Shown here in pieces: positions 1 to 34,847 of a stretch of 64,000 nucleotides of DNA (position 1 is its first letter; each line of letters starts with the position of its first letter). The translations under genes and the position numbers were made by a program. The stretch spans positions 1 through 64,000 of the IMG/VR virus record IMGVR_UViG_3300032236_002285; one strand, given 5' to 3'. Under the pieces are notes generated by a model. The model was not told the DNA's origin, made no database searches, and saw nothing but the letters and a program-made list of their open reading frames with translations.

Positions 1-1632
1 TCAAGTGGTTCTTCGGGATCATCTGGTAACTCAGGTTCATCTGGATCAAGTGGTACATCAGGTTCTTCTGGATCAAGTGGTACATCAGGATCAAGTGGTT
101 CTTCGGGATCATCTGGTAACTCCGGTTCAAGTGGTTCTTCAGGTTCTTCAGGTTCAAGTGGTAACTCCGGTTCAAGTGGTTCTTCAGGTTCTTCAGGTTC
201 AAGTGGTAACTCAGGTTCATCTGGATCAAGTGGTACATCAGGATCAAGTGGTTCTTCAGGATCATCTGGTAACTCCGGATCAAGTGGTTCTTCAGGATCA
301 TCTGGTACGAGTGGATCTTCGGGATCTTCAGGTTCTTCTGGATCAAGTGGTACATCTGGTACTTCAGGTAGTTCAGGATCAAGTGGTAACTCAGGTTCCT
401 CAGGCTCTAGTGGTGTAAGTGGTTCAAGTGGATCAAGTGGTACATCAGGTTCAAGTGGATCAAGTGGTACATCAGGTAGTTCAGGATCATCTGGTAACTC
501 AGGCTCTTCAGGCTCCTCAGGTACATCAGGATCTTCAGGATCATCTGGTAACTCAGGTTCAAGTGGATCGAGTGGTACATCAGGTTCTTCGGGATCATCT
601 GGTAACTCAGGCTCAAGTGGTTCATCTGGTACATCAGGTTCTTCAGGATCATCTGGTAACTCAGGTTCTTCAGGATCATCTGGTAACTCAGGTTCTTCGG
701 GATCATCTGGTAACTCAGGTTCAAGTGGATCGAGTGGCACATCAGGTTCTTCAGGATCATCTGGTAACTCAGGTTCAAGTGGATCAAGTGGTAACTCAGG
801 TTCAAGTGGATCAAGTGGTACATCAGGTAACTCAGGCTCAAGTGGATCAAGTGGTACATCAGGTTCAAGTGGATCAAGTGGTACATCAGGTAGTTCAGGA
901 TCAAGTGGTAACTCAGGTTCTTCAGGATCATCTGGTAACTCAGGTTCTTCAGGATCATCTGGTAACTCAGGCTCAAGTGGATCAAGTGGTAACTCAGGTT
1001 CTTCAGGATCAAGTGGTACATCTGGTAACTCAGGCTCAAGTGGATCAAGTGGTAACTCAGGTTCAAGTGGATCGAGTGGTAACTCAGGTTCAAGTGGTTC
1101 ATCTGGTACATCAGGTTCTTCAGGATCAAGTGGTAACTCAGGTTCAAGTGGATCGAGTGGTACATCAGGTTCAAGTGGATCAAGTGGTACATCAGGTAGT
1201 TCAGGATCAAGTGGTAACTCAGGTTCTTCAGGATCAAGTGGTAACTCAGGTTCAAGTGGATCGAGTGGTACATCAGGTAGTTCAGGATCAAGTGGTACAT
1301 CAGGTAGTTCAGGATCAAGTGGTACATCAGGCTCACATGGATCAAGTGGATCTTCAGGAACATCAGGATCATCAGGATCATCAGGTGTTAATGGTGCTTC
1401 CGGTTCTTCAGGTTCTTCAGGTGTTAATGGTGCTTCAGGATCAAGTGGATCTTCAGGATCATCAGGATCATCAGGTGTTAATGGTGCTTCCGGTTCTTCA
1501 GGTTCTTCAGGTGTTAATGGTGCTTCAGGATCAAGTGGATCTTCAGGAACATCAGGCTCATCAGGCTCAAGTGGTAATTCAGGTTCAAGTGGATCATCAG
1601 GTACTTCAGGTAGCTCAGGTTCTTCTGGTACA
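1..1632 (+). repeat. Coding tandem repeat, 9-nt period (Gly-X-Ser; X mostly S/T/N), roughly 180 triplets
   Basis: Repeating ggt/gga-(tca/tct/aca/aac)-(agt/tca/tct) units with synonymous variation. A second short block lies near 2056-2187. Confidence 0.95.
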
Positions 1633-2679
1633 AGTGTTTCAGTTACTTCCCCATCAAATAACTCAGTATTAACATCAAATGGTACTGCAAATGGTGCTGT
1701 TGCTCAAGCTAACCTAATATTTAATGGTAGTATATTGAGTGTTACGGGTAGTATTGTTGCTGCAAATGGTTTATATAGTGTTGGTTCATATTCAGGTTCC
1801 TACTCAGATGGTACCGTTGTTGATTATGTTACTGGTAATGGTAGAATATCTGTAGGTCCTGCTGATAATTTAACTTTATATGCTGGTGGTCCGGCAAATA
1901 CATCTATTGGTGTTTTTGCAAGTGGTTCAACTACATTAAACCAACAATTATATTTGACTGGTATAGGTACTCAATCATCTACATTGTATTTAACTATAAG
2001 TACTCCTAGTGGTAAGATTGGCTATGCTACTGCTTCTGGTAGTGGTGGTGGTGGTGCTTCTGGTTCATCAGGTTCATCAGGTACAAGTGGCTCTTCGGGA
2101 TCAAGTGGTACATCAGGCTCACATGGTTCATCTGGATCAAGTGGAACTTCTGGATCAAGTGGTACATCGGGTACTTCTGGTACATCTCCTACTGCTGCTG
2201 TAGTTAGTAGTAGTGGTTCGGCTCTTTTTATTCCTCAGTGGTTAAACTCTACTACTTTACAGAATAGTGCAATGCAACAAGCCGGTTCTTTCCCAACTGC
2301 CAAAATTGGTATTAACCAAGTTCCTACTTCATATGCTTTAGAGGTAACTGGTGATATCTATGCTACAGGTAATATTATAGCATTCTCTGATGAATCAGTA
2401 AAAGATAATGTTAAAACAATTACAAATGCTCTTGATAAAGTCAATAAAATGAGAGGTGTTACCTTTACTAGAAATGACGAACAAGATAAAGATAGAGTGT
2501 ATGCCGGTGTTATAGCACAAGAAATGGCTCAGGCTTTCCCTGAAGTTGTATTCGATAATGCTGATGGTACTAAAGCCGTGGCTTACCCAAGTATTGTATC
2601 TGTCTTAATAGAGGCTATTAAAGAACAACAACTTCAAATAGACCAACTAAAAGAAGAGATTAAAAATCTAAAGAAATAA
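1..2679 (+). CDS. Tail fibre/spike-like protein (5'-truncated by window) with long Gly-X-Ser repeat and C-terminal intramolecular chaperone (peptidase S74-like) domain
   Basis: Frame 1 reads SSGSSGSSGNSG... from base 1 and continues without a stop into the 1735..2679 ORF. The C-terminus has AFSDESVKDNV...GVIAQE...VLIEAIKEQQLQI, typical of S74 chaperones of trimeric fibres. Confidence 0.85.
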   Translation, partial: SSGSSGSSGNSGSSGSSGTSGSSGSSGTSGSSGSSGSSGNSGSSGSSGSSGSSGNSGSSGSSGSSGSSGNSGSSGSSGTSGSSGSSGSSGNSGSSGSSGSSGTSGSSGSSGSSGSSGTSGTSGSSGSSGNSGSSGSSGVSGSSGSSGTSGSSGSSGTSGSSGSSGNSGSSGSSGTSGSSGSSGNSGSSGSSGTSGSSGSSGNSGSSGSSGTSGSSGSSGNSGSSGSSGNSGSSGSSGNSGSSGSSGTSGSSGSSGNSGSSGSSGNSGSSGSSGTSGNSGSSGSSGTSGSSGSSGTSGSSGSSGNSGSSGSSGNSGSSGSSGNSGSSGSSGNSGSSGSSGTSGNSGSSGSSGNSGSSGSSGNSGSSGSSGTSGSSGSSGNSGSSGSSGTSGSSGSSGTSGSSGSSGNSGSSGSSGNSGSSGSSGTSGSSGSSGTSGSSGSSGTSGSHGSSGSSGTSGSSGSSGVNGASGSSGSSGVNGASGSSGSSGSSGSSGVNGASGSSGSSGVNGASGSSGSSGTSGSSGSSGNSGSSGSSGTSGSSGSSGTSVSVTSPSNNSVLTSNGTANGAVAQANLIFNGSILSVTGSIVAANGLYSVGSYSGSYSDGTVVDYVTGNGRISVGPADNLTLYAGGPANTSIGVFASGSTTLNQQLYLTGIGTQSSTLYLTISTPSGKIGYATASGSGGGGASGSSGSSGTSGSSGSSGTSGSHGSSGSSGTSGSSGTSGTSGTSPTAAVVSSSGSALFIPQWLNSTTLQNSAMQQAGSFPTAKIGINQVPTSYALEVTGDIYATGNIIAFSDESVKDNVKTITNALDKVNKMRGVTFTRNDEQDKDRVYAGVIAQEMAQAFPEVVFDNADGTKAVAYPSIVSVLIEAIKEQQLQIDQLKEEIKNLKK

Positions 2680-2712
2680 AAAAAGACCCGTTGTAATTAA
2701 CGGGTCTTTTAA
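2677..2712. terminator. Bidirectional intrinsic terminator
   Basis: AAAAGACCCGTT-loop-AACGGGTCTTTT between convergent genes. Confidence 0.8.
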
Positions 2713-2714
2713 TT

Positions 2715-3455
2715 TTAAGGTGTTGCTACACCTCTTTTCGAGACGACAATAGAAGCCATTTCATTTGCCCAAATTATAGATGATTTGATATCACCTGTTT
2801 CTATGTATTTTAAGATAAAAGCTGATGTAAATGTATCACCTGCACCGCTAACATCTATTGTTTCTTGTGGATTAGGACTTGGATATATTATATCTTTGAA
2901 CTTTGTGCCCCTACTACCTAATGTTATTATAATATTATTACACTCTAATAAGTCTGAATTTTGAATAGACTCTTTTTCATTTAATTTTACAAAAGAATAA
3001 CTTTTAACAATTTCCTTACTTAGCCTCCTTTTTGAGTCTAGTATGGATATTTTGCTACTTCTAGCAATTTTACCAAGGTCTTCATCACTTATAAAGCCTT
3101 TATGATAATCACTAACAATAACAATACTATAATTAACTAAAGAAGATAATTTTTCACTTGTTAGTTCTAATTTAGATATACTTGTTTCACCCTCATCTAA
3201 TCTTAAAAACATATGATTACTCTTTTTCTCTACAAATCTTGTTTTTGTAATTATCTCATCTTGATGCCAATGGTCTACCTCAATATTTTTATTCATTGAT
3301 TTTAAGTTTCTAACAACATTACCAGCCATTCCATCATTTTCAACTATTTCCATAGGGTTTAGAACAGGTACTGGTGCTTCAGGACTAAATCTAGAAACAT
3401 CACAATACATGAATCTATCAATACATTTTTCTCCTATTACTAAAATCTTAATCAT
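2715..3455 (-). CDS. HldE/RfaE domain I-like heptose-7-phosphate kinase (PfkB family)
   Basis: MIKILVIGE...SRFSPEAPVPV...GMAGNV, SDYHKG, DVSGAGDTF anion-hole motif. Start moved to ATG 3455. Confidence 0.85.
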   Translation of the reverse strand: MIKILVIGEKCIDRFMYCDVSRFSPEAPVPVLNPMEIVENDGMAGNVVRNLKSMNKNIEVDHWHQDEIITKTRFVEKKSNHMFLRLDEGETSISKLELTSEKLSSLVNYSIVIVSDYHKGFISDEDLGKIARSSKISILDSKRRLSKEIVKSYSFVKLNEKESIQNSDLLECNNIIITLGSRGTKFKDIIYPSPNPQETIDVSGAGDTFTSAFILKYIETGDIKSSIIWANEMASIVVSKRGVATP

Positions 3456-3465
3456 TTTATACTTT

Positions 3466-3852
3466 TTATTTTTGAGAGTCACCTTTCCAAACTCTATATG
3501 AATCTGAATCAGAATGTGTTGTTGAAACTTCAAAGATAACACCATCTGTTAAAGCTTCTAATTGGTGAGGTTGACCTGGTCTTTGTCTAACGGTATCACC
3601 TTCAACTAACCTTTGTTCTATAACATCAGCTGTTTCGGTATCTATCCAACGATATAGGAATTCACCTTTATCAACATACCAAGTTTCATCTTTAATCATA
3701 TGATAGTGCATCGAAAATTTTGCACCTTTATTAAAACAAAGTAACTTGCCACAATAAAGTTCATTATTTTCAATAATAACTTCCTTACCCCAACCCTTTG
3801 GTACACAACATCCTTCTGTATGAAGTGCGTTTATAACAATTGGTTTATCCAT
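3466..3852 (-). CDS. Cupin-fold sugar isomerase-like protein
   Basis: KGWGKE...SMHYHMIKDETWYV...PGQPHQL...FEVST cupin motifs. Confidence 0.75.
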   Translation of the reverse strand: MDKPIVINALHTEGCCVPKGWGKEVIIENNELYCGKLLCFNKGAKFSMHYHMIKDETWYVDKGEFLYRWIDTETADVIEQRLVEGDTVRQRPGQPHQLEALTDGVIFEVSTTHSDSDSYRVWKGDSQK

Positions 3853-6025
3853 TTATTACTTGATTTATTTTTTCAATTACCATAGATGATGTAATTTGTT
3901 TAGTACATTCAAATTGCCTCTCAGTGTCTTTATGATCCGGACACCAGTTCCAATCACCTCCATTTAATCTATGTCGATTAAAACATCCTGTACAAACATT
4001 TTTATTTATAACACGATAGGTATTTGATGTAGTTTCACTATACTCTTCACTGAAGCCAGATATAAGTACGGTAGGTAATCCAATTGTCCAAGACAACCAA
4101 CTTAAACCAGAACCTAAACCAACAAAGAATTGACAAGTAGCCATTTCTTCAATTAATCTATCAATTGAGCCAGCTTCAAATTTAGTTATGCCTTTTGGTT
4201 GAAAATTACCCATATAACCATCAGGTTCTTTTGAGTAAAGAACAACTTCATAACCAAGTGATATTAAATAATCAACTACTTCTTGCCAACCATTTGGATT
4301 GTTCCAATATTTAGCTTGACAAGTGGCATGAATTCCAATACCAACTTTCTTTTTCTTTTCAACATTTGGAACTTTTAATAAAGCTCTTGTTTCTTTATAA
4401 TCTAAGCCTAAAATATCAGAGGCTGTTTTTTGTAATGGTTCTTTTCTAAAGTCATTTGGATTTCTCGCTTCATCATATTTACCATCTTTATAGAACCAAC
4501 CTATTTTATACATAGCGTATAGATTATCAACAACGCTGCCTGGTTCAACAAATGTAATATCTGGATATGTTTCTCTAAACAAATAGTTCATAAAACAAGA
4601 TACTACTAATTGACATTCATTTTTATCTTTAAATTCTCTAATAAAAGGAATCCAAGCTAATGTATCACCTAATGAGCTACTTTCTAATGTGATAAATACT
4701 TTCTTATCTTTTAAGTCTAAAGTTTTATCATATAATAAAGTACCACCTTCCCAAATCTTAGTATTCCATTTTGTAAAATATTCTCGATTTAACTTAACCC
4801 AGTGATTTATTGGTAGTATTTCAGAGTAATGACATCTACCTGACTCATCATAGAATTCTATTTTGAATTTACTATCAGAACTTCCAGTTATTTCTAAAAA
4901 TGGATTAACTATAAAATGTTGAGTTACTATTGGTTTAGGTATAAATTTAGTTTGTTCCATTATAGGCATTCTGTGTACTTTTTTATAAAAGTTATAATAA
5001 GTATTTGCGAAAGATTCTGACTCATCAATAACTTCATACTTTTTATCACTTTGTAATAAAGCAATGATTTTATACTTTGTAGAAACAAGATCCTCATTTA
5101 TTTCAGTAATATATGGAGTAAACATACTCATATATTGAGGTAAGTTTCTTGAAATTATTTTAAGACCGTGTGAAGCCGATTCTTTAAGAACTAAAGGATT
5201 ACACTCCCATGTTGAATTAAACATAAAGACATCGGCCGCTTTCATAAAAGTATCTATATCAGATCTTTCACCCCAAACTTTTACATTTGAAGGAATATTT
5301 TGCATAATTGGACTCCAATACTCTGAAAAGTTCATTGCTTGATTTCCTATAAAGTGAAATTGTATATCAGGATTTGATTGTTCCATCAATCTAGCTATTT
5401 CAACACCTTCTCCTTGATTCTTACCAGATGTCCAAAGACCTACATTAATTACATGTTTTTTATTAGGATCCATACCTAATAGTATTTTGGATTCTAATTT
5501 TTCAGCATCTGTTGGTACTTTATTTTCTAAAGGAAATTGTATAACCTCGCTATAAGAAGGCATTTTAGCAAATGTTTTTTCTTTGTGCCATGGTGTACAA
5601 AAAGCGTAAGCATCTGGGTTAAATATTTTACCTGAATCAGGGTTAAACCAAACATTATGACAAGTTTCAACTATTTTCCAAGTTCTATTATTATCATATA
5701 GTTCGTTTAAAAAGTTGCTAGGAAATTGTTGACCAAAACCTTCTAATATCTCATCAACATGTACAACATCTATGTTGTTTTCTTTAATTATATCAAGTAC
5801 TCTATTTTTATCTTCATAAAGAGTAAAGAAGTTTTCAGGTTTTATTAGCTTTTTAATTTGCTCTTTTTGAACAACATACTCATTGCTAAAATTTGAATAT
5901 TCAATTACAAATAACTCCAAATCTTCATAAGATATTAAAGCTTCAATTCTTCTTAAAAGAAATGAAGGCATCCCACCAGTTGAAAGATGTGGTGCTAAAA
6001 ATAAAATCTTTATCTTTTCTTGCAT
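3845..6025 (-). CDS. Fused glycosyltransferase: N-terminal GT4-like domain plus C-terminal Aah/TibC-like protein heptosyltransferase
   Basis: N-half has PHLSTGGMP, KNQGE and ECNPLVLKE. C-half has SSSLGDTLAWIP, KYWNNPNGW, GLGSGLSWLSW and a Cys cluster VCTGCFN...WNWCPDH...QFECTKQIT. Confidence 0.8.
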   Translation of the reverse strand: MQEKIKILFLAPHLSTGGMPSFLLRRIEALISYEDLELFVIEYSNFSNEYVVQKEQIKKLIKPENFFTLYEDKNRVLDIIKENNIDVVHVDEILEGFGQQFPSNFLNELYDNNRTWKIVETCHNVWFNPDSGKIFNPDAYAFCTPWHKEKTFAKMPSYSEVIQFPLENKVPTDAEKLESKILLGMDPNKKHVINVGLWTSGKNQGEGVEIARLMEQSNPDIQFHFIGNQAMNFSEYWSPIMQNIPSNVKVWGERSDIDTFMKAADVFMFNSTWECNPLVLKESASHGLKIISRNLPQYMSMFTPYITEINEDLVSTKYKIIALLQSDKKYEVIDESESFANTYYNFYKKVHRMPIMEQTKFIPKPIVTQHFIVNPFLEITGSSDSKFKIEFYDESGRCHYSEILPINHWVKLNREYFTKWNTKIWEGGTLLYDKTLDLKDKKVFITLESSSLGDTLAWIPFIREFKDKNECQLVVSCFMNYLFRETYPDITFVEPGSVVDNLYAMYKIGWFYKDGKYDEARNPNDFRKEPLQKTASDILGLDYKETRALLKVPNVEKKKKVGIGIHATCQAKYWNNPNGWQEVVDYLISLGYEVVLYSKEPDGYMGNFQPKGITKFEAGSIDRLIEEMATCQFFVGLGSGLSWLSWTIGLPTVLISGFSEEYSETTSNTYRVINKNVCTGCFNRHRLNGGDWNWCPDHKDTERQFECTKQITSSMVIEKINQVING

Positions 6026-6112
6026 AGTTACACTTATATTTTTTCTTATAGTTTATATAAAATTTTGTAATAAAGTTATATTCTTTATTATTAAAAAGTA
6101 TGTATGAAAATT

Positions 6113-6120
6113 AATATATA
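6113..6120 (+). promoter_or_regulatory. Putative late promoter AATATATA
   Basis: Recurring octamer, 5 nt before ATG 6126. Confidence 0.6.
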
Positions 6121-6125
6121 CTCAT

Positions 6126-6890
6126 ATGAAACTTGTAAAATATTTTGAATTTAATCAACAAGATTTAGAACCTATTAAATCTTTTTATCTTAAAGAAGAA
6201 TTAAATCCTAGATTATGGGATGATTTTAAGTTAGATGATGAAGTAAGAGAAGAATTACTTACAATTGCTCAAGATTTTTATGAAAATGTTGAGGCTGGTG
6301 CTGATGTAGTTGATATAGTACTTGCTGGATCTTTATGTAACTATAACTGGTCTGAAAAGTATTCAGATTTTGATTTACATATTATTATTGATTTTGATGA
6401 TGTTGATGAAAACTTTGAATTAGTTGAGAAGTTTTGTGATTATGCTAAAAAGATTTGGAATGAACAACATGATATTAAAATCAAAGGCTATGAAGTTGAA
6501 ATAGCTATTCAAGATAATGATGATTTAGATAAAGCTATTGAAGGTGGTAGAATGGGTGGTGTTTTTTCTTTATTGAAAAATAAATGGATTAAAAGACCAG
6601 AAAGAATAGATTTTGAGCCTGATGAAAAGCTAATAGAAGAAAAATCTAAAACTATTATGATGTCTGTTGATGATATCGAAGAACAATCAGAAGAAGATAA
6701 ATATGAAGCTTTTGATGAAAAGATTTCAAAGGTTTGGAAGAAGATTAAAGATTTTAGACAAAGTGGTTTAGATTCTGAATCTGGCGAGTTTTCAGTTGGT
6801 AACTTAGTATTTAAGTTACTAAGAAGAAATGGGTACATTGGTAAAATAATGGAACTAAAGAGAAAAGTTTACGATAAACAATTTAAGTAA
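6126..6890 (+). CDS. Pol-beta superfamily nucleotidyltransferase with N-terminal CTS-like tag
   Basis: DIVLAGSLCNYNWSEKYSDFDLHIIID (GS...DxD motif), third acidic residue in YEVE. Confidence 0.75.
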   Translation: MKLVKYFEFNQQDLEPIKSFYLKEELNPRLWDDFKLDDEVREELLTIAQDFYENVEAGADVVDIVLAGSLCNYNWSEKYSDFDLHIIIDFDDVDENFELVEKFCDYAKKIWNEQHDIKIKGYEVEIAIQDNDDLDKAIEGGRMGGVFSLLKNKWIKRPERIDFEPDEKLIEEKSKTIMMSVDDIEEQSEEDKYEAFDEKISKVWKKIKDFRQSGLDSESGEFSVGNLVFKLLRRNGYIGKIMELKRKVYDKQFK

Positions 6891-6891
6891 T

Positions 6892-7587
6892 ATGGAAATT
6901 AAAATATCAGAAATAGAACAAGTATTCAAAGATGTCTTTGTTGCTGAAGAAGGTGTAGTAAATACAGTTGAATCTGTATATGAGATGTCAAGAGATGAAG
7001 ATTTCTACAAACTTGTTATCTCTATACATGGTTTATCAACTCAAGATACTTCAATTATACATACTAAGTTTATATTCAAAACAGACTTAAATAAAAGACA
7101 TCTTATTGAAGATTCTTTTATCTATCTATATGATATCAATTGTGTTTATCATAAGATAGAGTTTACAAATGTTGTAGACATGAAAAAGAAAATAGAAGAT
7201 ATTGTTGAATCAAAAAACTTTGGAGAGGATTTGCAAATTCTTTCTGACTTTATTGAAGCTCCAGCTATGTTCTTAAACTATTACATGAGAAGAGATAAGA
7301 TTACGGATTATTCAATATTTGATGTTGAGTATGAACCTAAGTTTAAAACAACTCCTTGTGATAAAACAACATTTGATTTTAAGATTAACATTAATAATAA
7401 TTATAAAATGGAACTATCTATACATAAAATAGATAGAGTTGATGAGGAAGAACTAGATACTTATAAGTTTCAATTTAAGTTTATGGATGAGATTGAAACA
7501 TTTGAAACAGATACTCTTAAAAACCTACACTTCTTTATTGGAGACCATATTGCTAAAATTTTAGATAGAAAATTAAAGAATAAGTAA
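6892..7587 (+). CDS. Hypothetical protein
   Basis: 231-aa ORF in operon, typical codon usage. Confidence 0.7.
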   Translation: MEIKISEIEQVFKDVFVAEEGVVNTVESVYEMSRDEDFYKLVISIHGLSTQDTSIIHTKFIFKTDLNKRHLIEDSFIYLYDINCVYHKIEFTNVVDMKKKIEDIVESKNFGEDLQILSDFIEAPAMFLNYYMRRDKITDYSIFDVEYEPKFKTTPCDKTTFDFKININNNYKMELSIHKIDRVDEEELDTYKFQFKFMDEIETFETDTLKNLHFFIGDHIAKILDRKLKNK

Positions 7588-8243
7588 TGAGATATCTTGA
7601 AAAATTTGTCAATTATTTAAATGAATCAACAGAGGATATAACCGATTTAACTAAAGAAGAGTTAGATGAGTTACTTATTCCTATTACAGATTTAGGTGTT
7701 CAATATACATTTTCACCACCAAGAGTTATCACGGATGGTGAATTTTCTGGATTCAAATCAATGAATATAGTTTTTAGAAACTCTTTTCAATTAGGACCAT
7801 CTGGTGGATATACTGAGCAAATTATTGATGATAAATTCTGGGACTTCTTAGATGAGTTAATAGCTCTTAAAAATCGTTTAGAAAGTTCTAGAGTTTCTAT
7901 TAATACTAACTGGAGACACCACATAGTTGTTACTTTTGTACAAAAAGCCAAAGTTGAAGGTGATTTATTTACAATACAAAAGTTGTATAATGATATGTGT
8001 TTAAGAACTAATGCCGCAAAGAGTGATTTTGTAAATAACATGACTAAGAGTTTAGATAAAGAAAATTTAAAAATTACAGTTAATTGTAATGGTTATAGAG
8101 AGGGTGCTTATACTGATAGAAAGTGGAATGGTCTTTTCAGAGGTATAGATTTTTCTAAATTTAATGTTGAAAAGGATATTACTGAAGATAGATATGGTAT
8201 TAAAAATGCTGTTATTACAATTACTCTTAAAAGTGAATCATAA
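7587..8243 (+). CDS. Hypothetical protein with CTS-like N-terminus (MRYLEKFVNYLNES)
   Basis: ORF coupled to the upstream gene through a TAATG overlap. Confidence 0.7.
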   Translation: MRYLEKFVNYLNESTEDITDLTKEELDELLIPITDLGVQYTFSPPRVITDGEFSGFKSMNIVFRNSFQLGPSGGYTEQIIDDKFWDFLDELIALKNRLESSRVSINTNWRHHIVVTFVQKAKVEGDLFTIQKLYNDMCLRTNAAKSDFVNNMTKSLDKENLKITVNCNGYREGAYTDRKWNGLFRGIDFSKFNVEKDITEDRYGIKNAVITITLKSES

Positions 8244-8280
8244 CATTTAATATATATGTTAATAAAAATATTATAGTAAG

Positions 8281-9720
8281 ATGTCTCATATATTATTAAA
8301 ACAAGTACCAACTTCAGCGATTACTGCACCTGCATCAACAGATGTTAAATTTTTTAGTAATTTTAACGATGGTGGTCTTTTGTATTATATGGATAGTTCA
8401 GGCAATCCGATGCCTGTTGGTAGTGGAGGGGGTGGTTCTACATATGTTCCAGTTGTATCAACAACATATGCTAGTTTATACTCTTTGTGTACTTCAAGTG
8501 GATTTGCTACAGGTTCTTATTATTTAATTAATGACTTTGAATCAATTTATGAACAGCCAGATTTTTATTGTGATGGTACTCCTAAGTCTTCCTTAGATTT
8601 AAAAGGTAAGCCTTCTGGTTGGGGATACCAACCTATTTTAGTAATGGCCACTTCTAAAAATTCTTTATCAATTGATGCTTATCAACCGCCTATCACTGGT
8701 GGTAGTTATTATGGTTTTAATAATGATAAAATTAAATATGATTTTTCTTTTAATAAAACAGAGTTTAATAATAACACTAAAGGTAGAATAACAGAAAGAA
8801 TAGATCAGTTTGGTAACAGAACTGATTATGACCATAGAGCTATTAGATTTAAAAGATATCAAAATTATACTAAAAATACTATTAAATCGGGCATTATAGA
8901 CTCATATAATTGCACCACTGGTGATTTGACTGGTGTTGGTACTTTTTTCCTATCCGAACTATCAGCTAATGATATTATTATTATAGATTCAATGTCTGAT
9001 TTAGGTTATAATATTGGATTAAAAGTTAGATCCGTAACAAATGATGTCATGGCTACTGTTTTCATCGATAGCTTATACTCTGGTAGTGTTCCAAGTGTTG
9101 TTGCTTTAAATAGTGGTACGACAATTACTCCTGTTGATTACAGCTTTGGTGGTAAAAATTATGATTATTATTCAACAACGGCTACCGGTGTTTATAATCA
9201 ATATAAGGAAGTTTATTTTGGACAAGGTGATAATAATGATTGTAATAAGGAAGTTTATACGTTTCAATTATCATATCCTAATTTAACATCAGGTGCTACT
9301 AATAATAAAATTGGCAATTACTCTCAGATTTACTTATCTGGTTCTACTAATAATGTTTTTATATTACCTAATAATGTTTTTGGTTCATCTTGTAATAACA
9401 ATGTTATTTTAGATAATTGTTATAACAATCATATTGGTGATGGTTTCTTTGATAATAATTTAGGTTATAATTTTAGTAAAAATTTAATAGGTGATAATTT
9501 CTCAAAGAATACTACTATTGATACATTTTCTTCTAATATTATATCTGATAATTTTAGATGGAATATAATACAAACAGGTATTTCAACCTATGATTTTACA
9601 TCATCAACACATGTTTATAGTAACTATACCTGCTATATGTTTTCAAATTCTTCGGGGTTTTCTAGATTGTCATATTATGACCCATCTGATGTATTGACGA
9701 TTGTTAATGTTGATGCTTAA
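8281..9720 (+). CDS. Virion/tail-associated protein with Asn-rich beta-helix-like C-terminal repeats
   Basis: About 11-residue repeats (NNHIGDGFFDNNLGYNFSKNLIGDNF); AATATATA upstream near 8249. Confidence 0.55.
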   Translation: MSHILLKQVPTSAITAPASTDVKFFSNFNDGGLLYYMDSSGNPMPVGSGGGGSTYVPVVSTTYASLYSLCTSSGFATGSYYLINDFESIYEQPDFYCDGTPKSSLDLKGKPSGWGYQPILVMATSKNSLSIDAYQPPITGGSYYGFNNDKIKYDFSFNKTEFNNNTKGRITERIDQFGNRTDYDHRAIRFKRYQNYTKNTIKSGIIDSYNCTTGDLTGVGTFFLSELSANDIIIIDSMSDLGYNIGLKVRSVTNDVMATVFIDSLYSGSVPSVVALNSGTTITPVDYSFGGKNYDYYSTTATGVYNQYKEVYFGQGDNNDCNKEVYTFQLSYPNLTSGATNNKIGNYSQIYLSGSTNNVFILPNNVFGSSCNNNVILDNCYNNHIGDGFFDNNLGYNFSKNLIGDNFSKNTTIDTFSSNIISDNFRWNIIQTGISTYDFTSSTHVYSNYTCYMFSNSSGFSRLSYYDPSDVLTIVNVDA

Positions 9721-10518: not shown

Positions 10519-13503
10519 ATGGATAAGAAGTTACTTGACGCTCTGAATAATTTATCTATCGCCCTTGGTGATATAGCACAGGCACTTGCTGATAAAAGTG
10601 AGGCTACTTCTGCAACAGCAAAGGCTATGAAGGGAGGTGATTTTATTAGTGAGATTAAAGAAATTAATGTAGGTGTAAAACAACTACAGAAAGATACTAA
10701 GCAAATTTTAAGTAATCAACAAACGATTATGAAAATGGCTGAAACAAAATCTAAAGATTCTAAAACATCAGATGTTGAGGGTTTAGGAAAAGATAAAACA
10801 TCACAAAAGAACTTCAAAGAAGGTATCGGTGTTATATTACTTATTGCAGTTGCTGTATTAGCTTTGGGTGTTGCCTTTAACTTAGTTGGTAAGGTTAACT
10901 TTCTTTCTGTTGTTGCTTTGTCATTAGCACTTCCGTTACTTGCTATTGGTTTTGCTAAAGTTTTAACGACACTAAAAGAAGTTGGTTTTAATGCTAAAGA
11001 AGATAGTAAGAATTTTCTTATTGCTATAGGTGCTATTGCACTATCTATAACAATGGCATCTTGGATATTACAAATGATTATTCCTTTGTCATTTTCTAAA
11101 GCCATGACTGCCACATTTATTGCTGTTACATTTGCACTATTAGCTCCTTCTATTTCAAGTTTTATGACGGCATTTAAGGGTCTAACCTGGATGGAGATAG
11201 CAAAAGGAGCAGTATCAATGGTTATAATATTACCAGCAATGGCTTTAGGTCTTGCTTTTGCATCTTGGGCATTTCAATTAATTAGACCTATTGGTATTGC
11301 ACAATTTCTTACTGCTGTTGGTATATCAGTTGCCTTTGTTGTTATTTCTTTTGGTTTAAAAAAGATGTTAGAGTCGTTTAAAGATGTAGATCTTAAAACG
11401 GCTGTAAAAGATATTGTACTTCTTCCTTTAGTTTTACCAGCAGTTGCTTTGGGTATAGCTCTATCATCATATGCTTTTCAATTAATAAAACCTGTAGGTT
11501 TATCTCAAATGTTTACCGCTGTTTTTATATCAGTTGCGTTTACTGTTATTGCTTATGGTTTGAATAAAATACTAACTTCATTTAAGGATATTTCTCCAGA
11601 ACAAGCAATTGAAGCCGCTATAATGATACCAATATTATTTGTTGGTATATCATATGCGATAGCCTTTTCATCTATAGCTTTTTCTAAAATAGTTCCAATT
11701 AGTTTTACTCAATTTCTTACCGCTGTTGGTATAGCCGCTGTTTTTGTTGTTATATCACTTGGTTTGAAGCTTATGACTAAAGCGATATCTCAGCTGAATT
11801 GGAAAGATGTTTTACTGATACCTGCTTTATACTCTGTTATATCAGTTGCTATATTTATATCTTCAGCTATTTTATCAAAAACTACAGTTATACCATTGTC
11901 TACATTAACCTCTATATTAGCATTTAGTATTACAATAGCGGGTGCTGTTGTTGCTATGGGAGGTGCTGTTTGGTTACTTACAAAAATGGGACTAGGTATT
12001 AAAGATGCTGTTATAGGTGGTTTACTAACTGTAATTATATCAACTGCTATAATGGTATCATCTCATATATTAGCACTTGGTAATTATAAAGATTACCCAG
12101 ATTGGAAATGGGCACTTGGTGTTGGTTTATCATTATTGGCTTTTGCCCCAGCTATGGTTGCTTTGGGTTTAATTAGTATGAGTGGTGTTGGTGCTCTTGC
12201 TTTATTGGCAGGTGCAGCCGCTGTCTTGGGTGTTGCTGGTACTATAGTTGTGACATCTCATATATTATCATCTGGTAAATATACAGGTGGTCCTCCACTT
12301 TGGTGGTCTATGTCTACTGCACTTTCATTAACTGCTTTTACTGCTGGTATGGTTTTACTTGGTGGTATGATTGTTGCTAGTTTTGGATTAGGTGCTTTGG
12401 CGCTTGCTGCTGGTAGTAAGGCTGTTCTAACTGTTGCTCAAACAATAGTTGATACATCTTTTATATTACAAAAGGGTAAGTATGTGGGTGGTCCTACTAA
12501 AGAATGGGCTGAGGGTATATCATTGGCTTTAGGTGCTTTTTCACCTGTTTATGGTATGTTAATGGCTAATAAAATAATGAGTCTATTTGGTGGTGGTGTT
12601 GGTCCAGATGATTTTACAAAGGCAATAAGAGTTGTTTCACAAGGTATAGTAGATGCTGCTATTTTCTTTGCAAATGTTGATCGTAGCATATTTAAGGGTG
12701 GTCCTACTAAAGAATGGTCGGATGGTGTAGGCGGTGCTATTGGTGCTTTCTCGCCTGTGTTTAAGGCTTTACATGAAGATAGTGGTTGGTTTACATCAAG
12801 TGATGATGTTATTAAAAACATGACAAATGCTGTAAAATCCATATCACAAAGTATAGTTGATGTTGCTACAAATTTTTCATCAGCAGGTAATATATGGACA
12901 AATTATCCTACCGCAGATTGGACTAAGAATATAGGACAAGCCATAACAAGTTTTGCAGATTTAGTTAAAAATCTTAAAGGTTATGAGAATTCAGGATTTA
13001 AATCTCTAATTGGTGCTGATCCTATAACTAATATTTCAAATGGTATGATTAAAATAGCCGGTGCTTATGATAGATTAGCAAGAGCTATAAAAAACTTTGG
13101 TTCAGCTCTTAATGGATTGGATATTGTTAAAGTTAATGCCTTTAGATCACTCACTGCTAACTTAGCTATGTTATCTGCTATGGATTCAACGATGTTTAGT
13201 AACATGTTGAAGGTTATTGAAAGTAGAAGTGGTGTTTTTGCTAACTTATTGAAATCACAAACAGCTGAGATTACTAAAAGACCAGGTGTTAATGTTGCAG
13301 GTGCTGCTGGTGCTGCTGGCCAAGGTAAAAAGGTTGATGAGTCATATATGAGAGATAATAAGGGTGAAACTCAACTACAAAAACTTGATAAAGTTGTTGC
13401 TTTATTAAGTGAATTGAGAAACTCAGCAAGAAGCATTGATGAGCATCTTCAAAATCCTAAAATGAAGAAAAATGAAGATATCGGCGCTAAAGGTGATGAT
13501 TAA
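10519..13503 (+). CDS. Tape-measure-like, multi-hydrophobic-helix virion protein
   Basis: 994 aa, Ala/Gly/Ile-rich with ~69-aa repeated hydrophobic units (LIRPIGIAQFLTAV / LIKPVGLSQMFTAV / IVPISFTQFLTAV) and GGPTKEW repeats; TATATATA upstream. Confidence 0.5.
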   Translation: MDKKLLDALNNLSIALGDIAQALADKSEATSATAKAMKGGDFISEIKEINVGVKQLQKDTKQILSNQQTIMKMAETKSKDSKTSDVEGLGKDKTSQKNFKEGIGVILLIAVAVLALGVAFNLVGKVNFLSVVALSLALPLLAIGFAKVLTTLKEVGFNAKEDSKNFLIAIGAIALSITMASWILQMIIPLSFSKAMTATFIAVTFALLAPSISSFMTAFKGLTWMEIAKGAVSMVIILPAMALGLAFASWAFQLIRPIGIAQFLTAVGISVAFVVISFGLKKMLESFKDVDLKTAVKDIVLLPLVLPAVALGIALSSYAFQLIKPVGLSQMFTAVFISVAFTVIAYGLNKILTSFKDISPEQAIEAAIMIPILFVGISYAIAFSSIAFSKIVPISFTQFLTAVGIAAVFVVISLGLKLMTKAISQLNWKDVLLIPALYSVISVAIFISSAILSKTTVIPLSTLTSILAFSITIAGAVVAMGGAVWLLTKMGLGIKDAVIGGLLTVIISTAIMVSSHILALGNYKDYPDWKWALGVGLSLLAFAPAMVALGLISMSGVGALALLAGAAAVLGVAGTIVVTSHILSSGKYTGGPPLWWSMSTALSLTAFTAGMVLLGGMIVASFGLGALALAAGSKAVLTVAQTIVDTSFILQKGKYVGGPTKEWAEGISLALGAFSPVYGMLMANKIMSLFGGGVGPDDFTKAIRVVSQGIVDAAIFFANVDRSIFKGGPTKEWSDGVGGAIGAFSPVFKALHEDSGWFTSSDDVIKNMTNAVKSISQSIVDVATNFSSAGNIWTNYPTADWTKNIGQAITSFADLVKNLKGYENSGFKSLIGADPITNISNGMIKIAGAYDRLARAIKNFGSALNGLDIVKVNAFRSLTANLAMLSAMDSTMFSNMLKVIESRSGVFANLLKSQTAEITKRPGVNVAGAAGAAGQGKKVDESYMRDNKGETQLQKLDKVVALLSELRNSARSIDEHLQNPKMKKNEDIGAKGDD

Positions 13504-31354: not shown

Positions 31355-31915
31355 CTATTTTGATGTCTGACTTGACATCTTCTTGATATTATCCATCATA
31401 TTTTTTTCTACATCTTTCATTTTATCATCTAATGACTTTTGTGCTTCTGCTATATCTTTAACTAAAGAAGCTATAGTTGTCGTATTTGTCGATATTCTGT
31501 TGGTTATATCAGTGATTTTACCATTTACAGATTGTTTTGTACTGTCGTCGGTTATACTTTGTAGTTGACTACTAAAATCATCTTTTTTAACTTTATCATC
31601 AGCAATACTATTTTGAAGATTATCAACTTTTCTTTTAAGATTAGCAACATGTAAGTATTCAACTAAAAAAGGATTTTTAGGTGTTTTTTCATCGGCCTTG
31701 CCTATAATCTCATCAACCTTTATTTGTAAGTCAGCATCTGATTTTATTTTAAGATAAGCATTGTCTAACAAAGGTTTCTTTGTTTTGTATTCAGCCAATT
31801 GCTTTTGAGTTATTGATAACTCATCTTTAGCCATTTTAACATCAGGTTCGTCTGTTAGATTAATATCAAAGTCTGCTTCTTCTATAAAGAGTTTATATGT
31901 TTTAAGAGTTCTCAT
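31355..31915 (-). CDS. Coiled-coil protein with CTS-like N-terminus (MRTLKTYKLFIEE)
   Basis: 186-aa helical ORF. Confidence 0.7.
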   Translation of the reverse strand: MRTLKTYKLFIEEADFDINLTDEPDVKMAKDELSITQKQLAEYKTKKPLLDNAYLKIKSDADLQIKVDEIIGKADEKTPKNPFLVEYLHVANLKRKVDNLQNSIADDKVKKDDFSSQLQSITDDSTKQSVNGKITDITNRISTNTTTIASLVKDIAEAQKSLDDKMKDVEKNMMDNIKKMSSQTSK

Positions 31916-34797: not shown

Positions 34798-34847
34798 AAA
34801 TTTATGTAATTTTTTCAACTTATATATTAAAAACTATTTACTTAAAA

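What the first reader, a model, noticed from the sequence alone, without database searches (positions are those of the whole stretch)
1..6025. Ser-rich Gly-X-Ser fibre next to a heptose kinase / Aah-TibC-like heptosyltransferase operon: candidate virion O-glycosylation system
Seen: a fibre with more than 540 residues of Gly-X-Ser converges on an operon of GT4+Aah/TibC-like transferase, cupin and HldE-like kinase. Known: Aah/TibC enzymes transfer heptose from ADP-heptose onto Ser residues of autotransporter adhesins and contain a Cys iron-finger, and HldE kinase acts in ADP-heptose synthesis. Inference: the phage supplies activated heptose and densely glycosylates its own fibre, possibly with a second sugar added by the GT4 domain. 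This could give a mucin-like shield or adhesin, or stabilise a proline-poor triple helix.
Basis: partly seen in the sequence, partly recalled or inferred. Interest (0 to 1): 0.85.

Follow-up and report, generated by a model that had tools for sequence, protein, structure and literature searches.

The report
Phage sugar-coating enzyme beside collagen-like fibre
A huge environmental phage encodes a very long, proline-free Gly-Ser-Ser collagen-like fibre next to an enzyme of the family that attaches heptose sugars to serines, and the same enzyme-plus-repeat pairing recurs across many phages and some bacteria, so the phage very probably sugar-coats this fibre.

Summary
Frame 1 is open from base 1 to 2679. 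It holds 181 uninterrupted Gly-X-Y triplets (Y = Ser in 176), with no Pro and no charged residue, then a knob, a second short run and a Peptidase_S74 chaperone. The gene is cut by the contig end.

A bidirectional terminator separates it from a converging operon:
- a 726-aa GT4 + Aah/TibC-type fusion;
- a cupin;
- an HldA-like kinase.

The transferase half passes NCBIfam TIGR04414 (279.7 bits, cut-off 200). It keeps TibC's catalytic Asp and all four iron-finger Cys.

The fibre-as-acceptor idea could only be tested by comparative genomics, and that test came out positive:
- 32 of 80 viral loci carrying this enzyme hold a G-[ST]-[ST] repeat ORF, at a median 1.75 kb, in several gene orders.
- 0 of 80 lineage-matched control loci do.
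- In methanotroph chromosomes the enzyme sits directly next to small secreted (Gly-Thr-Ser)n proteins.
- Classical Aah/TibC enzymes instead sit next to AIDA-type autotransporters.

Caveats:
- This phage has lost the adenylyltransferase gene that its siblings keep.
- No GmhA or GmhB was found.
- Most Gly-Ser-Ser fibres have no enzyme in view.
- One phage subclade has the enzyme but no such repeat.

Nothing is shown biochemically. I rate it a new variant of a known kind.

The parts
1..2682 (+). 3' part of the fibre gene (893 codons plus stop). The N-terminus is missing because the contig ends here.
   Evidence: Frame 1 is open throughout. The C-terminal 358 aa match PHROG tail-fibre families, for example phrog_5668 at E 3e-32. 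The window is bases 1-64000 of IMGVR_UViG_3300032236_002285.
7..1635 (+). Collagen-like run of 181 uninterrupted Gly-X-Ser triplets (aa 3-545); proposed acceptor region with 324 Ser/Thr.
   Evidence: Composition; Pfam Collagen 266.8 bits; TRF period 27.
1636..2043 (+). Non-repeat Ser/Gly/Thr-rich knob between the two collagen-like runs (aa 546-681).
   Evidence: Translation. No Pfam domain was found.
2044..2187 (+). Second short Gly-X-Ser run of 16 triplets (aa 682-729).
   Evidence: weak Pfam Collagen hit.
2386..2679 (+). Peptidase_S74 intramolecular chaperone, with an S796-D-E-S-V-K801 motif at its start. It is predicted to cleave itself off after trimerisation.
   Evidence: PF13884 E 8.8e-15, aa 262-316 of window:1603-2679; motif position. 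The Ser/Lys dyad reading rests on my own knowledge of endosialidase chaperones.
2681..2710 (.). Bidirectional intrinsic-terminator-like hairpin between the converging fibre and kinase genes.
   Evidence: 12-bp stem with 5 GC pairs, flanked by an A run and a T run.
2715..3455 (-). HldA/HldE-domain-I-like pfkB sugar kinase, 246 aa (proposed heptose-7-phosphate kinase).
   Evidence: TIGR02198 scores 124 bits, best of 15 NCBIfam hits but below the cut-off of 345. The best PDB match is Burkholderia HldA 4E84, including the SPEAPVPV motif. phrog_8133 E 2e-70.
3466..3852 (-). 128-aa metal-type cupin. Proposed sugar-phosphate isomerase acting with the kinase; function not established.
   Evidence: Cupin_2, with weak Lyx_isomer and MannoseP_isomer hits. 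The HxH...E and later His positions are invariant in 24 homologues. It forms a cupin-NT-kinase triad in other phages, and viral CTP_transf_like+cupin fusions exist. Its fold neighbours are generic cupins.
4976..6025 (-). N-terminal GT4 (GT-B) glycosyltransferase domain of the 726-aa fusion (about aa 1-350).
   Evidence: PF00534 E 4e-11, PF13692; weak NCBIfam hits to IagA/BgsA and SdgA, far below their cut-offs; AlphaFold model pLDDT 85.
3848..4873 (-). C-terminal Aah/TibC-type (BAHT) O-heptosyltransferase module (aa 385-726). Catalytic Asp454 is at codon 4664-4666. Iron-finger Cys678, 681, 695 and 707 are at codons 3992-3994, 3983-3985, 3941-3943 and 3905-3907.
   Evidence: TIGR04414 279.7 bits, above the cut-off of 200. 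TibC 4RAP E 1.4e-60, with D110, T226, K230 and C339/342/358/370 aligned (residue roles from PMC4358343). These residues are invariant in 78 clade II and 13 clade I sequences.

Best explanation
The 726-aa protein is a cytoplasmic two-module protein O-glycosyltransferase. Its C-terminal module belongs to the iron-finger Aah/TibC (BAHT) heptosyltransferase family. It lies in a deep sister clade (clade II) whose acceptor is proposed to be a Gly-[Ser/Thr]-[Ser/Thr] collagen-like repeat rather than an autotransporter beta-helix.

Proposed sequence of events during infection:
1. The enzyme adds heptose, most likely from ADP-glycero-manno-heptose, to many of the roughly 320 visible Ser/Thr of the neighbouring fibre, before or during trimerisation by the S74 chaperone.
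2. The fused GT4 module probably adds a second sugar.
3. The cupin and the HldA-like kinase boost the early steps of nucleotide-heptose synthesis (isomerisation of sedoheptulose-7-P, then phosphorylation at C1).
4. Because this phage has lost the HldC-like adenylyltransferase that its siblings carry, the last steps must come from the host or from a gene outside the window.

The product would be a long (at least 155 nm in view; more than 2,600 aa in a relative), heavily glycosylated, proline-free and charge-free fibre.

Shown: domain identities, conserved catalytic and metal residues, gene order, and the comparative association. Inferred: the acceptor, the donor sugar, the roles of the cupin and the GT4 module, and any benefit of the glycan.
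For: Enzyme identity:
- TIGR04414 is passed at 279.7 bits against a cut-off of 200, and TibC 4RAP matches at E 1.4e-60.
- The equivalents of D110, T226, K230 and the four iron-finger Cys are invariant in all 78 clade II sequences. Their roles are taken from PMC4358343.
- E. coli WaaC and WaaF give no hit in the window or in any locus.

Acceptor:
- 32 of 80 IMG/VR loci with the enzyme (26 of 57 after dereplication) hold a G-[ST]-[ST]-run ORF. Over all 49 loci, viral and bacterial, that hold such an ORF, the median distance is 1.75 kb and 40 lie within 3 kb. The ORF lies upstream or downstream, on the same or the opposite strand.
- 0 of 80 sheath-centred control loci of the same lineage (1.07 Mb) hold one; Fisher p = 9e-12.
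- In the reverse test, 6 of 119 new G-[ST]-[ST] stretches (1.0 Mb) showed the enzyme, and two further matches lie on contigs already known to carry it. The enzyme was found in 356 of 2.9 million viral contigs.
- Microcystis phage Mel-JY01 and a 216-kb phage contig show the same pairing.
- 10 of 12 clade II loci from bacterial genomes (methanotrophs, a Polaromonas MAG and uncultured gamma- and betaproteobacteria) have a small signal-peptide or lipoprotein (GTS)n protein within 255 bp. Those inspected lie among housekeeping genes.
- Classical clade I enzymes are followed by AIDA and Autotransporter proteins, so the substrate is encoded next door in both clades.
- The tree splits the two clades with support 100.

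Donor:
- The kinase's best matches are HldE domain I and HldA.
- Siblings and group B carry an HldC-like nucleotidyltransferase between or beside these genes.
- The cupin-NT-kinase triad is conserved in other phages.
Against: - There is no biochemical evidence of any kind.
- One 21-member phage subclade (group B) has the enzyme, nucleotidyltransferase and kinase but no long G-[ST]-[ST] run within 10 kb. It has only a giant S/T-rich protein.
- Relatives L012 and L013 keep the operon but have other genes in the fibre slot.
- At least 85% of sampled G-[ST]-[ST] fibres show no enzyme in the visible stretch.
- The kinase is below the HldE equivalog cut-off and is short (246 aa).
- The nucleotidyltransferase is deleted here, and no GmhA or GmhB homologue was found.
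- Arg286 of TibC contacts the adenine and is Arg in 13 of 13 clade I sequences. It is Val, Leu or Ile in most (68 of 78) clade II sequences, so the nucleotide of the donor may differ.
- TibC is known to act on a folded beta-helix, not on a Gly-X-Y chain.
- The association largely reflects one deep clade, so it is not many independent gains.
Confidence: 0.6

Rival explanations
1. The operon is an auxiliary 'LPS' module. The GT9-type enzyme, GT4 domain and rfaE-like kinase remodel the host's lipopolysaccharide core or O-chain during infection (superinfection exclusion or receptor masking). On this view its position beside a fibre gene only reflects the usual clustering of such genes in host-recognition regions.
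For: Pfam sees only Glyco_transf_9, the family of the LPS heptosyltransferases. Pelagimyophage host-recognition clusters hold glycosyltransferases and rfaE, and their authors read these as O-chain modification (PMC7029224).
Against: The specific Aah/TibC equivalog model is passed. The N-terminal beta-strand domain, thumb and iron finger typical of the protein-modifying family are present. WaaC and WaaF give no hit. In methanotroph chromosomes the enzyme forms a two-gene pair with a secreted (GTS)n protein away from LPS genes. The lineage-matched control shows that the repeat proteins are not simply everywhere.
Confidence: 0.1
2. The enzyme is a protein O-glycosyltransferase, but its acceptor is something other than the Gly-X-Ser run. 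Candidates are another virion protein (as in group B, where a giant S/T-rich protein is the neighbour), the non-repeat knob of the fibre, or a host surface protein.
For: Group B, L012/L013, L003 and L206 have the enzyme without a long repeat nearby. TibC recognises a folded strand-loop-strand motif (PMC4358343).
Against: The common denominator of the neighbours across phages and bacteria is the repeat itself. The flanking domains differ: S74 fibres, Mel-JY01 fibre tips, and small secreted bacterial domains.
Confidence: 0.15
3. The acceptor is the fibre, but the sugar is not ADP-heptose. Clade II may use another nucleotide or another sugar-phosphate-derived donor made by the cupin, nucleotidyltransferase and kinase cassette.
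For: The adenine-contacting Arg286 is lost in clade II, and the stereoselectivity position (TibC Pro300, AAH Ser294) is Gly (PMC4358343). The kinase is below the HldE cut-off. No GmhA or GmhB was found. A long branch (1.58) separates the clades.
Against: Both the kinase and the sibling nucleotidyltransferase match HldE and HldA best. The beta-phosphate and heptose contacts T226 and K230 are invariant.
Confidence: 0.2
4. In this particular phage the system is decaying. Loss of the adenylyltransferase gene has left a non-functional remnant, and the fibre is unmodified.
For: The nucleotidyltransferase is cleanly deleted relative to L004. No copy was found elsewhere in the window or, by a pattern-limited scan, in the contig.
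Against: The transferase, cupin and kinase ORFs are intact, with all catalytic residues. L010 and L011 also lack the nucleotidyltransferase but retain intact genes and a fibre of more than 2,696 aa. This suggests the gene is dispensable where the host supplies the step.
Confidence: 0.1

Closest known systems
Aah/AIDA-I and TibC/TibA: bacterial autotransporter heptosyltransferases (BAHT; Lu et al. 2014; Yao et al. 2014, PMC4358343)
   Same: Same enzyme family by curated HMM. It has the same catalytic Asp, beta-phosphate contacts, iron-finger Cys4 and hydrophobic thumb tip. The enzyme is cytoplasmic, the substrate is encoded next to it, and many Ser residues in a repetitive protein are the target.
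   Different: It belongs to a deep sister clade (support 100, branch 1.58). The neighbour is a Gly-X-Ser collagen-like repeat, not an AIDA-repeat beta-helix autotransporter. It is encoded by a phage, is fused to a GT4 module, and lacks the adenine-contacting Arg286.
ADP-L-glycero-beta-D-manno-heptose pathway (GmhA, HldE or HldA+HldC, GmhB, HldD)
   Same: The kinase matches HldE domain I and HldA best. Siblings carry an HldC-like nucleotidyltransferase with the HxGH motif.
   Different: No SIS-type GmhA, no GmhB and no HldD were found. A cupin sits where an isomerase would be expected. The nucleotidyltransferase is deleted in this phage, and the kinase is short and below the equivalog cut-off.
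BclA, the collagen-like exosporium glycoprotein of Bacillus anthracis (own knowledge, not tested here)
   Same: A bacterial-type collagen-like Gly-X-Thr repeat that is densely O-glycosylated and forms a hair-like nap.
   Different: BclA repeats are Gly-Pro-Thr and carry rhamnose/anthrose oligosaccharides. They are made by unrelated glycosyltransferases, not by a GT9 iron-finger enzyme.
Virion O-glycosylation in mycobacteriophages (Freeman et al. 2023, as summarised in PMC12619734)
   Same: Phage-encoded glycosyltransferases that modify the phage's own structural proteins.
   Different: The acceptors there are C-terminal tails of capsid and tail-tube subunits, the hosts are actinobacteria and the glycosyltransferase families differ. 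No heptose and no collagen-like fibre are involved.
Serine-rich-repeat and SD-repeat adhesin glycosylation (GtfA/B; SdgA/SdgB)
   Same: GT4-type enzymes decorate long Ser-rich repeats. The GT4 half here has a weak SdgA hit (25.5 bits).
   Different: The hit is far below the cut-off of 800. Those systems belong to Gram-positive adhesins and use GlcNAc or Glc.

Membership tests
BAHT (Aah/TibC autotransporter O-heptosyltransferases, TIGR04414) | Score at or above the curated cut-off of the equivalog HMM | tested here: met
   279.7 bits against a cut-off of 200, aa 385-723 covering profile positions 27-374 of 374.
BAHT (Aah/TibC autotransporter O-heptosyltransferases, TIGR04414) | Catalytic base Asp110 and the donor phosphate contacts Thr226 and Lys230 of TibC | tested here: met
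   D454, T568 and K572 align to these residues. They are invariant in 78 of 78 clade II sequences. Their roles are from PMC4358343.
BAHT (Aah/TibC autotransporter O-heptosyltransferases, TIGR04414) | Iron finger: four Cys (TibC 339, 342, 358, 370) | tested here: met
   C678, C681, C695 and C707 align and are invariant in all 91 sequences. Iron binding itself was not tested.
BAHT (Aah/TibC autotransporter O-heptosyltransferases, TIGR04414) | N-terminal beta-barrel plus GT-B catalytic domain; ring dodecamer held by the beta-hairpin thumb | tested here: inconclusive
   The AlphaFold model has seven beta-strands at aa 366-435 before the catalytic domain. The thumb tip Phe265-Val266 aligns with Tyr604-Met605, which is conserved as Tyr-Met in clade II. 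The fold search of this model failed, and the oligomeric state cannot be tested here.
BAHT (Aah/TibC autotransporter O-heptosyltransferases, TIGR04414) | Adenine recognition by Arg286 (ADP-sugar specificity) | tested here: not met
   Arg in 13 of 13 clade I sequences. The window has Leu624, and 68 of 78 clade II sequences have Val, Leu or Ile.
BAHT (Aah/TibC autotransporter O-heptosyltransferases, TIGR04414) | Partner substrate is an AIDA-type autotransporter encoded next to the enzyme | tested here: not met
   No autotransporter is present; the neighbour is a collagen-like fibre. Clade I loci do have AIDA and Autotransporter neighbours.
BAHT (Aah/TibC autotransporter O-heptosyltransferases, TIGR04414) | Transfers heptose from ADP-heptose to Ser | not testable with these tools
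   This needs an enzyme assay or mass spectrometry.
HldE domain I / HldA heptose-7-phosphate kinase (TIGR02198) | Score at or above the curated cut-off | tested here: not met
   124.4 bits against a cut-off of 345. It is still the best of 15 NCBIfam hits.
HldE domain I / HldA heptose-7-phosphate kinase (TIGR02198) | N-terminal (V/I)GD/E...SPEAPVPV motif and C-terminal pfkB GAGD motif | tested here: met
   KILVIGEKCIDRF...SPEAPVPV aligns with Burkholderia HldA 4E84, and DVSGAGDT is present.
Complete ADP-heptose pathway encoded by the phage | GmhA isomerase, GmhB phosphatase and HldC/HldE-II adenylyltransferase present | tested here: not met
   phmmer with E. coli GmhA, GmhB, HldD and a phage nucleotidyltransferase finds nothing in the window. 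The nucleotidyltransferase is deleted relative to L004. Only 64 kb of the 476-kb genome could be seen.
Collagen triple-helix repeat (PF01391) | Uninterrupted Gly-X-Y periodicity recognised by the HMM | tested here: met
   266.8 bits against a cut-off of 27.2; 181 uninterrupted triplets.
Collagen triple-helix repeat (PF01391) | Stabilising Pro/Hyp or charged pairs in the X and Y positions (own knowledge of bacterial collagens) | tested here: not met
   No Pro and no Asp, Glu, Lys or Arg in aa 1-545. Whether it forms a triple helix is untested.
Peptidase_S74 intramolecular chaperone of fibres and spikes | HMM above cut-off and a Ser...Lys cleavage dyad | tested here: met
   55.2 bits against a cut-off of 22; S796-D-E-S-V-K801. 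The dyad reading rests on my own knowledge, and cleavage was not tested.
LPS inner-core heptosyltransferases WaaC/WaaF (GT9) | Detectable similarity to WaaC or WaaF | tested here: not met
   phmmer with E. coli K-12 WaaC and WaaF gives no hit in the window (E <= 0.01) or in about 200 loci (E <= 1e-4).

The most novel reading that the evidence does not exclude
A large, undescribed subfamily of iron-finger heptosyltransferases has the collagen-like Gly-[Ser/Thr]-[Ser/Thr] repeat as its acceptor. The family search found more than 4,000 relatives, and 356 viral contigs carry the enzyme. Huge aquatic phages would use it, with their own cupin, nucleotidyltransferase and kinase cassette for sugar activation, to build heptose-coated, proline-free fibres hundreds of nanometres long. 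Methanotrophs would use it on secreted proteins. On this reading the glycan, rather than proline or charge pairs, gives the repeat its stiffness, solubility or protease resistance.
Probability: 0.4. Interest if true: 0.85.

Novelty: new variant of a known kind. Interest (0 to 1): 0.72.

Why it matters
- It would be the first case of heptose O-glycosylation of a virus particle.
- It would be the first acceptor class for Aah/TibC-type enzymes other than autotransporters. That would extend a family known from enteric virulence factors into environmental phages and methanotrophs.
- It offers an explanation for how Gly-Ser-Ser 'collagens' without proline or charge can work as long fibres.
- It would reassign genes usually annotated as phage 'LPS' auxiliary genes to virion modification.
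- It gives a simple enzyme-plus-tag pair, a (GSS)n or (GTS)n repeat, that could be tested and perhaps used for protein glycoengineering in E. coli.
- A cultured carrier, Microcystis phage Mel-JY01, makes the idea directly testable.

Tried and rejected
- Megablast of 2700-9000 against GenBank phages found no match.
- tblastn of the TibC half found only 4 of 50,697 phage records.
- Fold search of the 726-aa AlphaFold model failed four times with 'no such model on the box'. The fold of the GT4 half and the TibC superposition could therefore not be checked structurally.
- The cupin has no PDB sequence match. Its Foldseek neighbours are generic metal cupins (KdgF, lyxose isomerase, oxalate decarboxylase, cupin PGI), so its role rests on context only.
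- Searches for GmhA, GmhB, HldD, WaaC and WaaF homologues in the window and in all loci found none.
- A search for the missing nucleotidyltransferase elsewhere in the window (tblastn, E <= 10) and in the contig (pattern-limited scan) found none.
- Literature searches for phage heptosyltransferases, virion heptosylation, collagen-like glycosylated phage fibres and Mel-JY01 found nothing relevant in the held library.
- The reading 'LPS heptosyltransferase' was considered and rejected on the family-specific HMM, the iron finger and the neighbourhood data.
- DNA glycosylation was considered and set aside: nothing in the domains or neighbours points to it, but it was not tested further.
- I checked whether group B giant proteins hide the repeat. 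Only a few have runs of five or six triplets, so that clade remains unexplained.

Full report
**What is in the sequence**

The window is the first 64 kb of a 476,236-bp IMG/VR contig (L014 is the same DNA). It comes from a low-GC (about 29%) contractile-tailed phage. Sheath, large terminase, portal, protease and major capsid genes were all identified. The capsid protein is 69% identical to those of the 635-642-kb 'huge phages' LR756502 and LR745206.

Frame 1 of the + strand is open from base 1 to 2679. It encodes, in order:
- 181 uninterrupted Gly-X-Y triplets;
- a knob of about 135 aa;
- 16 more triplets;
- a Peptidase_S74 chaperone with an S-D-E-S-V-K motif.

Y is Ser in 176 of the 181 triplets. 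X is Ser 120, Asn 26, Thr 26, Val 5, Ala 4. The repeat has no proline and no charged residue. Pfam Collagen scores 266.8 bits. The N-terminus is lost at the contig end. In a relative (L010) the same gene is open for more than 2,696 aa. ORFs in other frames across the repeat are artefacts.

A strong hairpin flanked by A and T runs (2681-2710) separates the fibre from a converging operon. The operon holds a kinase (2718-3455), a cupin (3469-3852) and a 726-aa glycosyltransferase (3848-6025).

**The transferase**

The N-terminal half is a GT4-type domain. The C-terminal half passes NCBI's equivalog model for autotransporter strand-loop-strand O-heptosyltransferases, TIGR04414, at 279.7 bits against a cut-off of 200. 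It matches TibC (PDB 4RAP) at E 1.4e-60.

I mapped that alignment onto the residues defined by Yao et al. (PMC4358343):

| TibC residue | Role | Window residue |
|---|---|---|
| Asp110 | catalytic base | Asp454 |
| Thr226, Lys230 | phosphate contacts | Thr568, Lys572 |
| Cys339, 342, 358, 370 | iron finger | Cys678, 681, 695, 707 |
| Phe265-Val266 | hydrophobic thumb tip | Tyr604-Met605 |

All but the thumb pair are invariant in 78 clade II and 13 classical sequences. The exception is TibC Arg286, which contacts the adenine. It is Arg in every classical sequence but hydrophobic in the window and in most of its clade. E. coli WaaC and WaaF find nothing. An AlphaFold model (pLDDT 85) shows the expected beta-rich N-terminal module followed by an alpha/beta domain. 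It could not be compared with the PDB because the fold search lost the model.

**The sugar-activation genes**

The kinase's best family match is HldE domain I, at 124 bits and below the equivalog cut-off of 345. Its best solved relative is Burkholderia HldA, and it shares the SPEAPVPV signature.

In sibling phages (L004, L006-L009, L012, L013) an HldC-like nucleotidyltransferase with the HxGH motif lies between the cupin and the kinase. In the window, about 373 bp holding that gene are replaced by 7 nt. L010 and L011 lack it too.

The cupin-nucleotidyltransferase-kinase triad recurs as a cassette in unrelated phages of about 303 kb, inside larger sugar islands. Viral fusions of CTP_transf_like and cupin domains exist. 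The cupin keeps the metal-binding His/Glu pattern and belongs to a very conserved viral family of more than 3,000 proteins. Its fold neighbours are unspecific.

My reading is that the cupin replaces GmhA as the isomerase, the kinase acts as HldA and the nucleotidyltransferase as HldC. This is an inference from context. No GmhA, GmhB or HldD homologue was found in the window or in any fetched locus.

**Is the fibre the acceptor?**

- *Forward test.* The enzyme occurs in 356 IMG/VR contigs. Of the best 80 loci, 32 hold an ORF with long Gly-[ST]-[ST] runs of up to 2,295 aa (26 of 57 after dereplication). Over all 49 loci, viral and bacterial, that hold such an ORF, the median distance is 1.75 kb and 40 lie within 3 kb. 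The ORF lies upstream or downstream, on the same or the opposite strand.
- *Control.* I fetched 80 loci centred on the tail sheath of the same phage lineage (1.07 Mb). None has such an ORF; Fisher p = 9e-12.
Of the 119 new stretches, 6 show the enzyme within the visible DNA (mean about 8.5 kb). Two further matches lie on contigs already known to carry it, and two more stretches show the kinase alone. This is far above the base rate, yet it means most such fibres have no enzyme in view.
- *Cultured and other phages.* Microcystis phage Mel-JY01 carries a 1,226-aa GT4...TibC fusion two genes from a G-[ST]-S fibre. That fibre is mis-annotated as minus-strand hypothetical proteins. A 216-kb phage contig has four consecutive GTS-repeat genes just downstream of the enzyme, after one small gene.
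- *Bacterial chromosomes.* This is the most telling result. In Methylomicrobium, Methylobacter, other Methylococcales, a Polaromonas MAG and uncultured proteobacteria, the enzyme is 44-52% identical to the window's. In 10 of 12 loci it sits within 255 bp of a small protein made of a signal peptide or lipobox, a (Gly-Thr-Ser)n run of up to about 30 triplets, and a globular domain. The loci inspected lie among housekeeping genes such as mfd.
- *Classical enzymes.* The classical enzymes of Escherichia, Citrobacter, Oxalobacter, Desulfovibrio and others are 35-39% identical to the window's. They are followed by AIDA-repeat autotransporters.

A quick maximum-likelihood tree of 91 dereplicated domains separates the classical clade from the phage and methanotroph clade. 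The classical clade has 13 rows, none with the repeat. The other clade (clade II) has 78 rows, 41 with it. Support is 100 and the branch length is 1.58. In both clades the neighbour is the presumed substrate, and in clade II that neighbour's only common feature is the Gly-[ST]-[ST] repeat.

**Exceptions and limits**

- A 21-member phage subclade ('group B') has a GT4+methyltransferase+GT25 protein, then the TibC-like enzyme, a nucleotidyltransferase and a kinase. It has no long repeat within 10 kb. Directly upstream lies a giant S/T-rich protein of 2,200-2,450 aa, which in a few cases carries runs of five or six triplets.
- A six-member subclade has ordinary collagen-like fibres with only scattered GTSGTT motifs.
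- L012 and L013 keep the operon but have other genes in the fibre slot.
- Many loci are cut by contig ends. The locus searches find only relatives that share back-translated peptides with the query.
- The tree is a quick search rooted at its midpoint.
- The association is largely one deep clade that has kept the linkage, not many independent gains.

**Mechanism proposed**

Late in infection the cytoplasmic enzyme adds heptose to serines and threonines of the nascent fibre's Gly-X-Ser run. The conserved thumb and iron finger suggest it may form a TibC-like ring. The fused GT4 module may extend or add a second sugar. The S74 domain then trimerises the fibre and removes itself.

The cupin and kinase raise the supply of heptose-1,7-bisphosphate. 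The host, or a gene outside the window, completes the nucleotide sugar.

The benefit could be solubility, stiffness, protease resistance, shielding or adhesion, but this is open. Because most Gly-Ser-Ser fibres lack a visible enzyme, the glycan is unlikely to be a general requirement for folding.

I put about 0.9 on the enzyme being a BAHT-type protein O-glycosyltransferase. I put about 0.7 on the repeat being the acceptor and about 0.7 on the donor being heptose. For the whole statement I give 0.6.

**Comparison with what is known, and novelty**

The enzyme is a member of the Aah/TibC family by every sequence criterion I could test except two: the adenine contact and the type of partner protein. 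The kinase resembles HldA but fails the equivalog cut-off. The pathway is incomplete.

Known analogies are BclA-type glycosylated collagen-like proteins and mycobacteriophage virion glycosylation. Both use unrelated enzymes and acceptors. The held literature has nothing on phage-encoded BAHTs, virion heptosylation or (GTS)n acceptors. JGI's pipeline simply names these proteins 'autotransporter strand-loop-strand O-heptosyltransferase'. Phage papers read similar genes as LPS modification (PMC7029224).

I therefore rate this a new variant of a known kind. It is well supported as a hypothesis and cheaply testable.

Noticed in passing
window 3456-3468 (junction between cupin and kinase); L004 11396-11797: Sibling phages carry an HldC-like nucleotidyltransferase (HxGH motif) between the cupin and the kinase. 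In the window about 373 bp holding it are replaced by 7 nt. L010 and L011 also lack it, possibly through an independent loss.
   Followed up: yes
L212, L213, L215-L220, L235, L236 (methanotroph and other proteobacterial chromosomes): A two-gene cassette of a TibC-like enzyme plus a small secreted or lipoprotein with an N-terminal (Gly-Thr-Ser)n run, set among housekeeping genes in the loci inspected. It looks like an undescribed bacterial protein-glycosylation pair.
   Followed up: partly
L001 (Microcystis phage Mel-JY01, PP395634) 2-3049: A 1,016-codon + strand ORF encoding a G-[ST]-S collagen-like fibre (Pfam Collagen E 1e-66) is annotated in GenBank as two minus-strand hypothetical proteins plus a short CDS. 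The record start probably cuts the gene.
   Followed up: partly
L326-L330 (about 303-kb phage contigs) 5001-6536 and flanks: The cupin, CTP_transf_like and PfkB triad is a conserved cassette. It sits beside DegT, hexapeptide acetyltransferases, two PF11397 'GlcNAc' glycosyltransferases and a HAD+NTP_transferase fusion. This looks like another phage sugar island, possibly for protein glycosylation.
   Followed up: partly
L040-L083 (group B), e.g. L044 6-6722 and 7737-12173: This phage subclade has GT4+methyltransferase+GT25, TibC-like, nucleotidyltransferase and kinase genes but no long Gly-[ST]-[ST] run. Upstream lies a 2,200-2,450-aa S/T-rich protein with a weak intein/Hint hit, and downstream a large protein with an N-terminal CTP_transf_like domain and DUF5661. 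The acceptor there is unexplained.
   Followed up: partly
window 27403-31293 (-), 15200-21031 (-), 10519-13503 (+), 31915-34818 (-): The tail sheath is unusually long (1,296 aa). Three very large ORFs (1,943, 994 and 967 aa) have no PHROG match.
   Followed up: no
window 62115-63806: The major capsid protein is 69% identical to those of the huge phages LR756502 and LR745206, and 52-54% identical to LR756501, LR756503 and LR756504, which also carry the TibC-like gene. More distant matches are Tenacibaculum and Prevotella (Lak) phages, hinting at a Bacteroidota host. No tRNA gene was found in the window.
   Followed up: partly
window 8281-9720 (+): A 479-aa Ser/Asn/Gly-rich ORF with a Gly run and a repetitive Asn-rich C-terminal part, with no Pfam or PHROG hit. 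It may be another fibre or baseplate protein. Its position is conserved in L013 and L206.
   Followed up: no
window 5-418 (+), 419-1672 (+), 407-1381 (-): Long ORFs in other frames and on the other strand across the Gly-X-Ser repeat are by-products of the repeat. They could be mis-called as genes, as happened in Mel-JY01.
   Followed up: yes
clade II alignment, window residue Leu624 (codon about 4154-4156): TibC's adenine-contacting Arg286 is invariant in classical enzymes but hydrophobic in the window and in most of the phage and methanotroph clade. The D,D/L,D-heptose selectivity position is Gly. The donor may therefore differ.
   Followed up: partly
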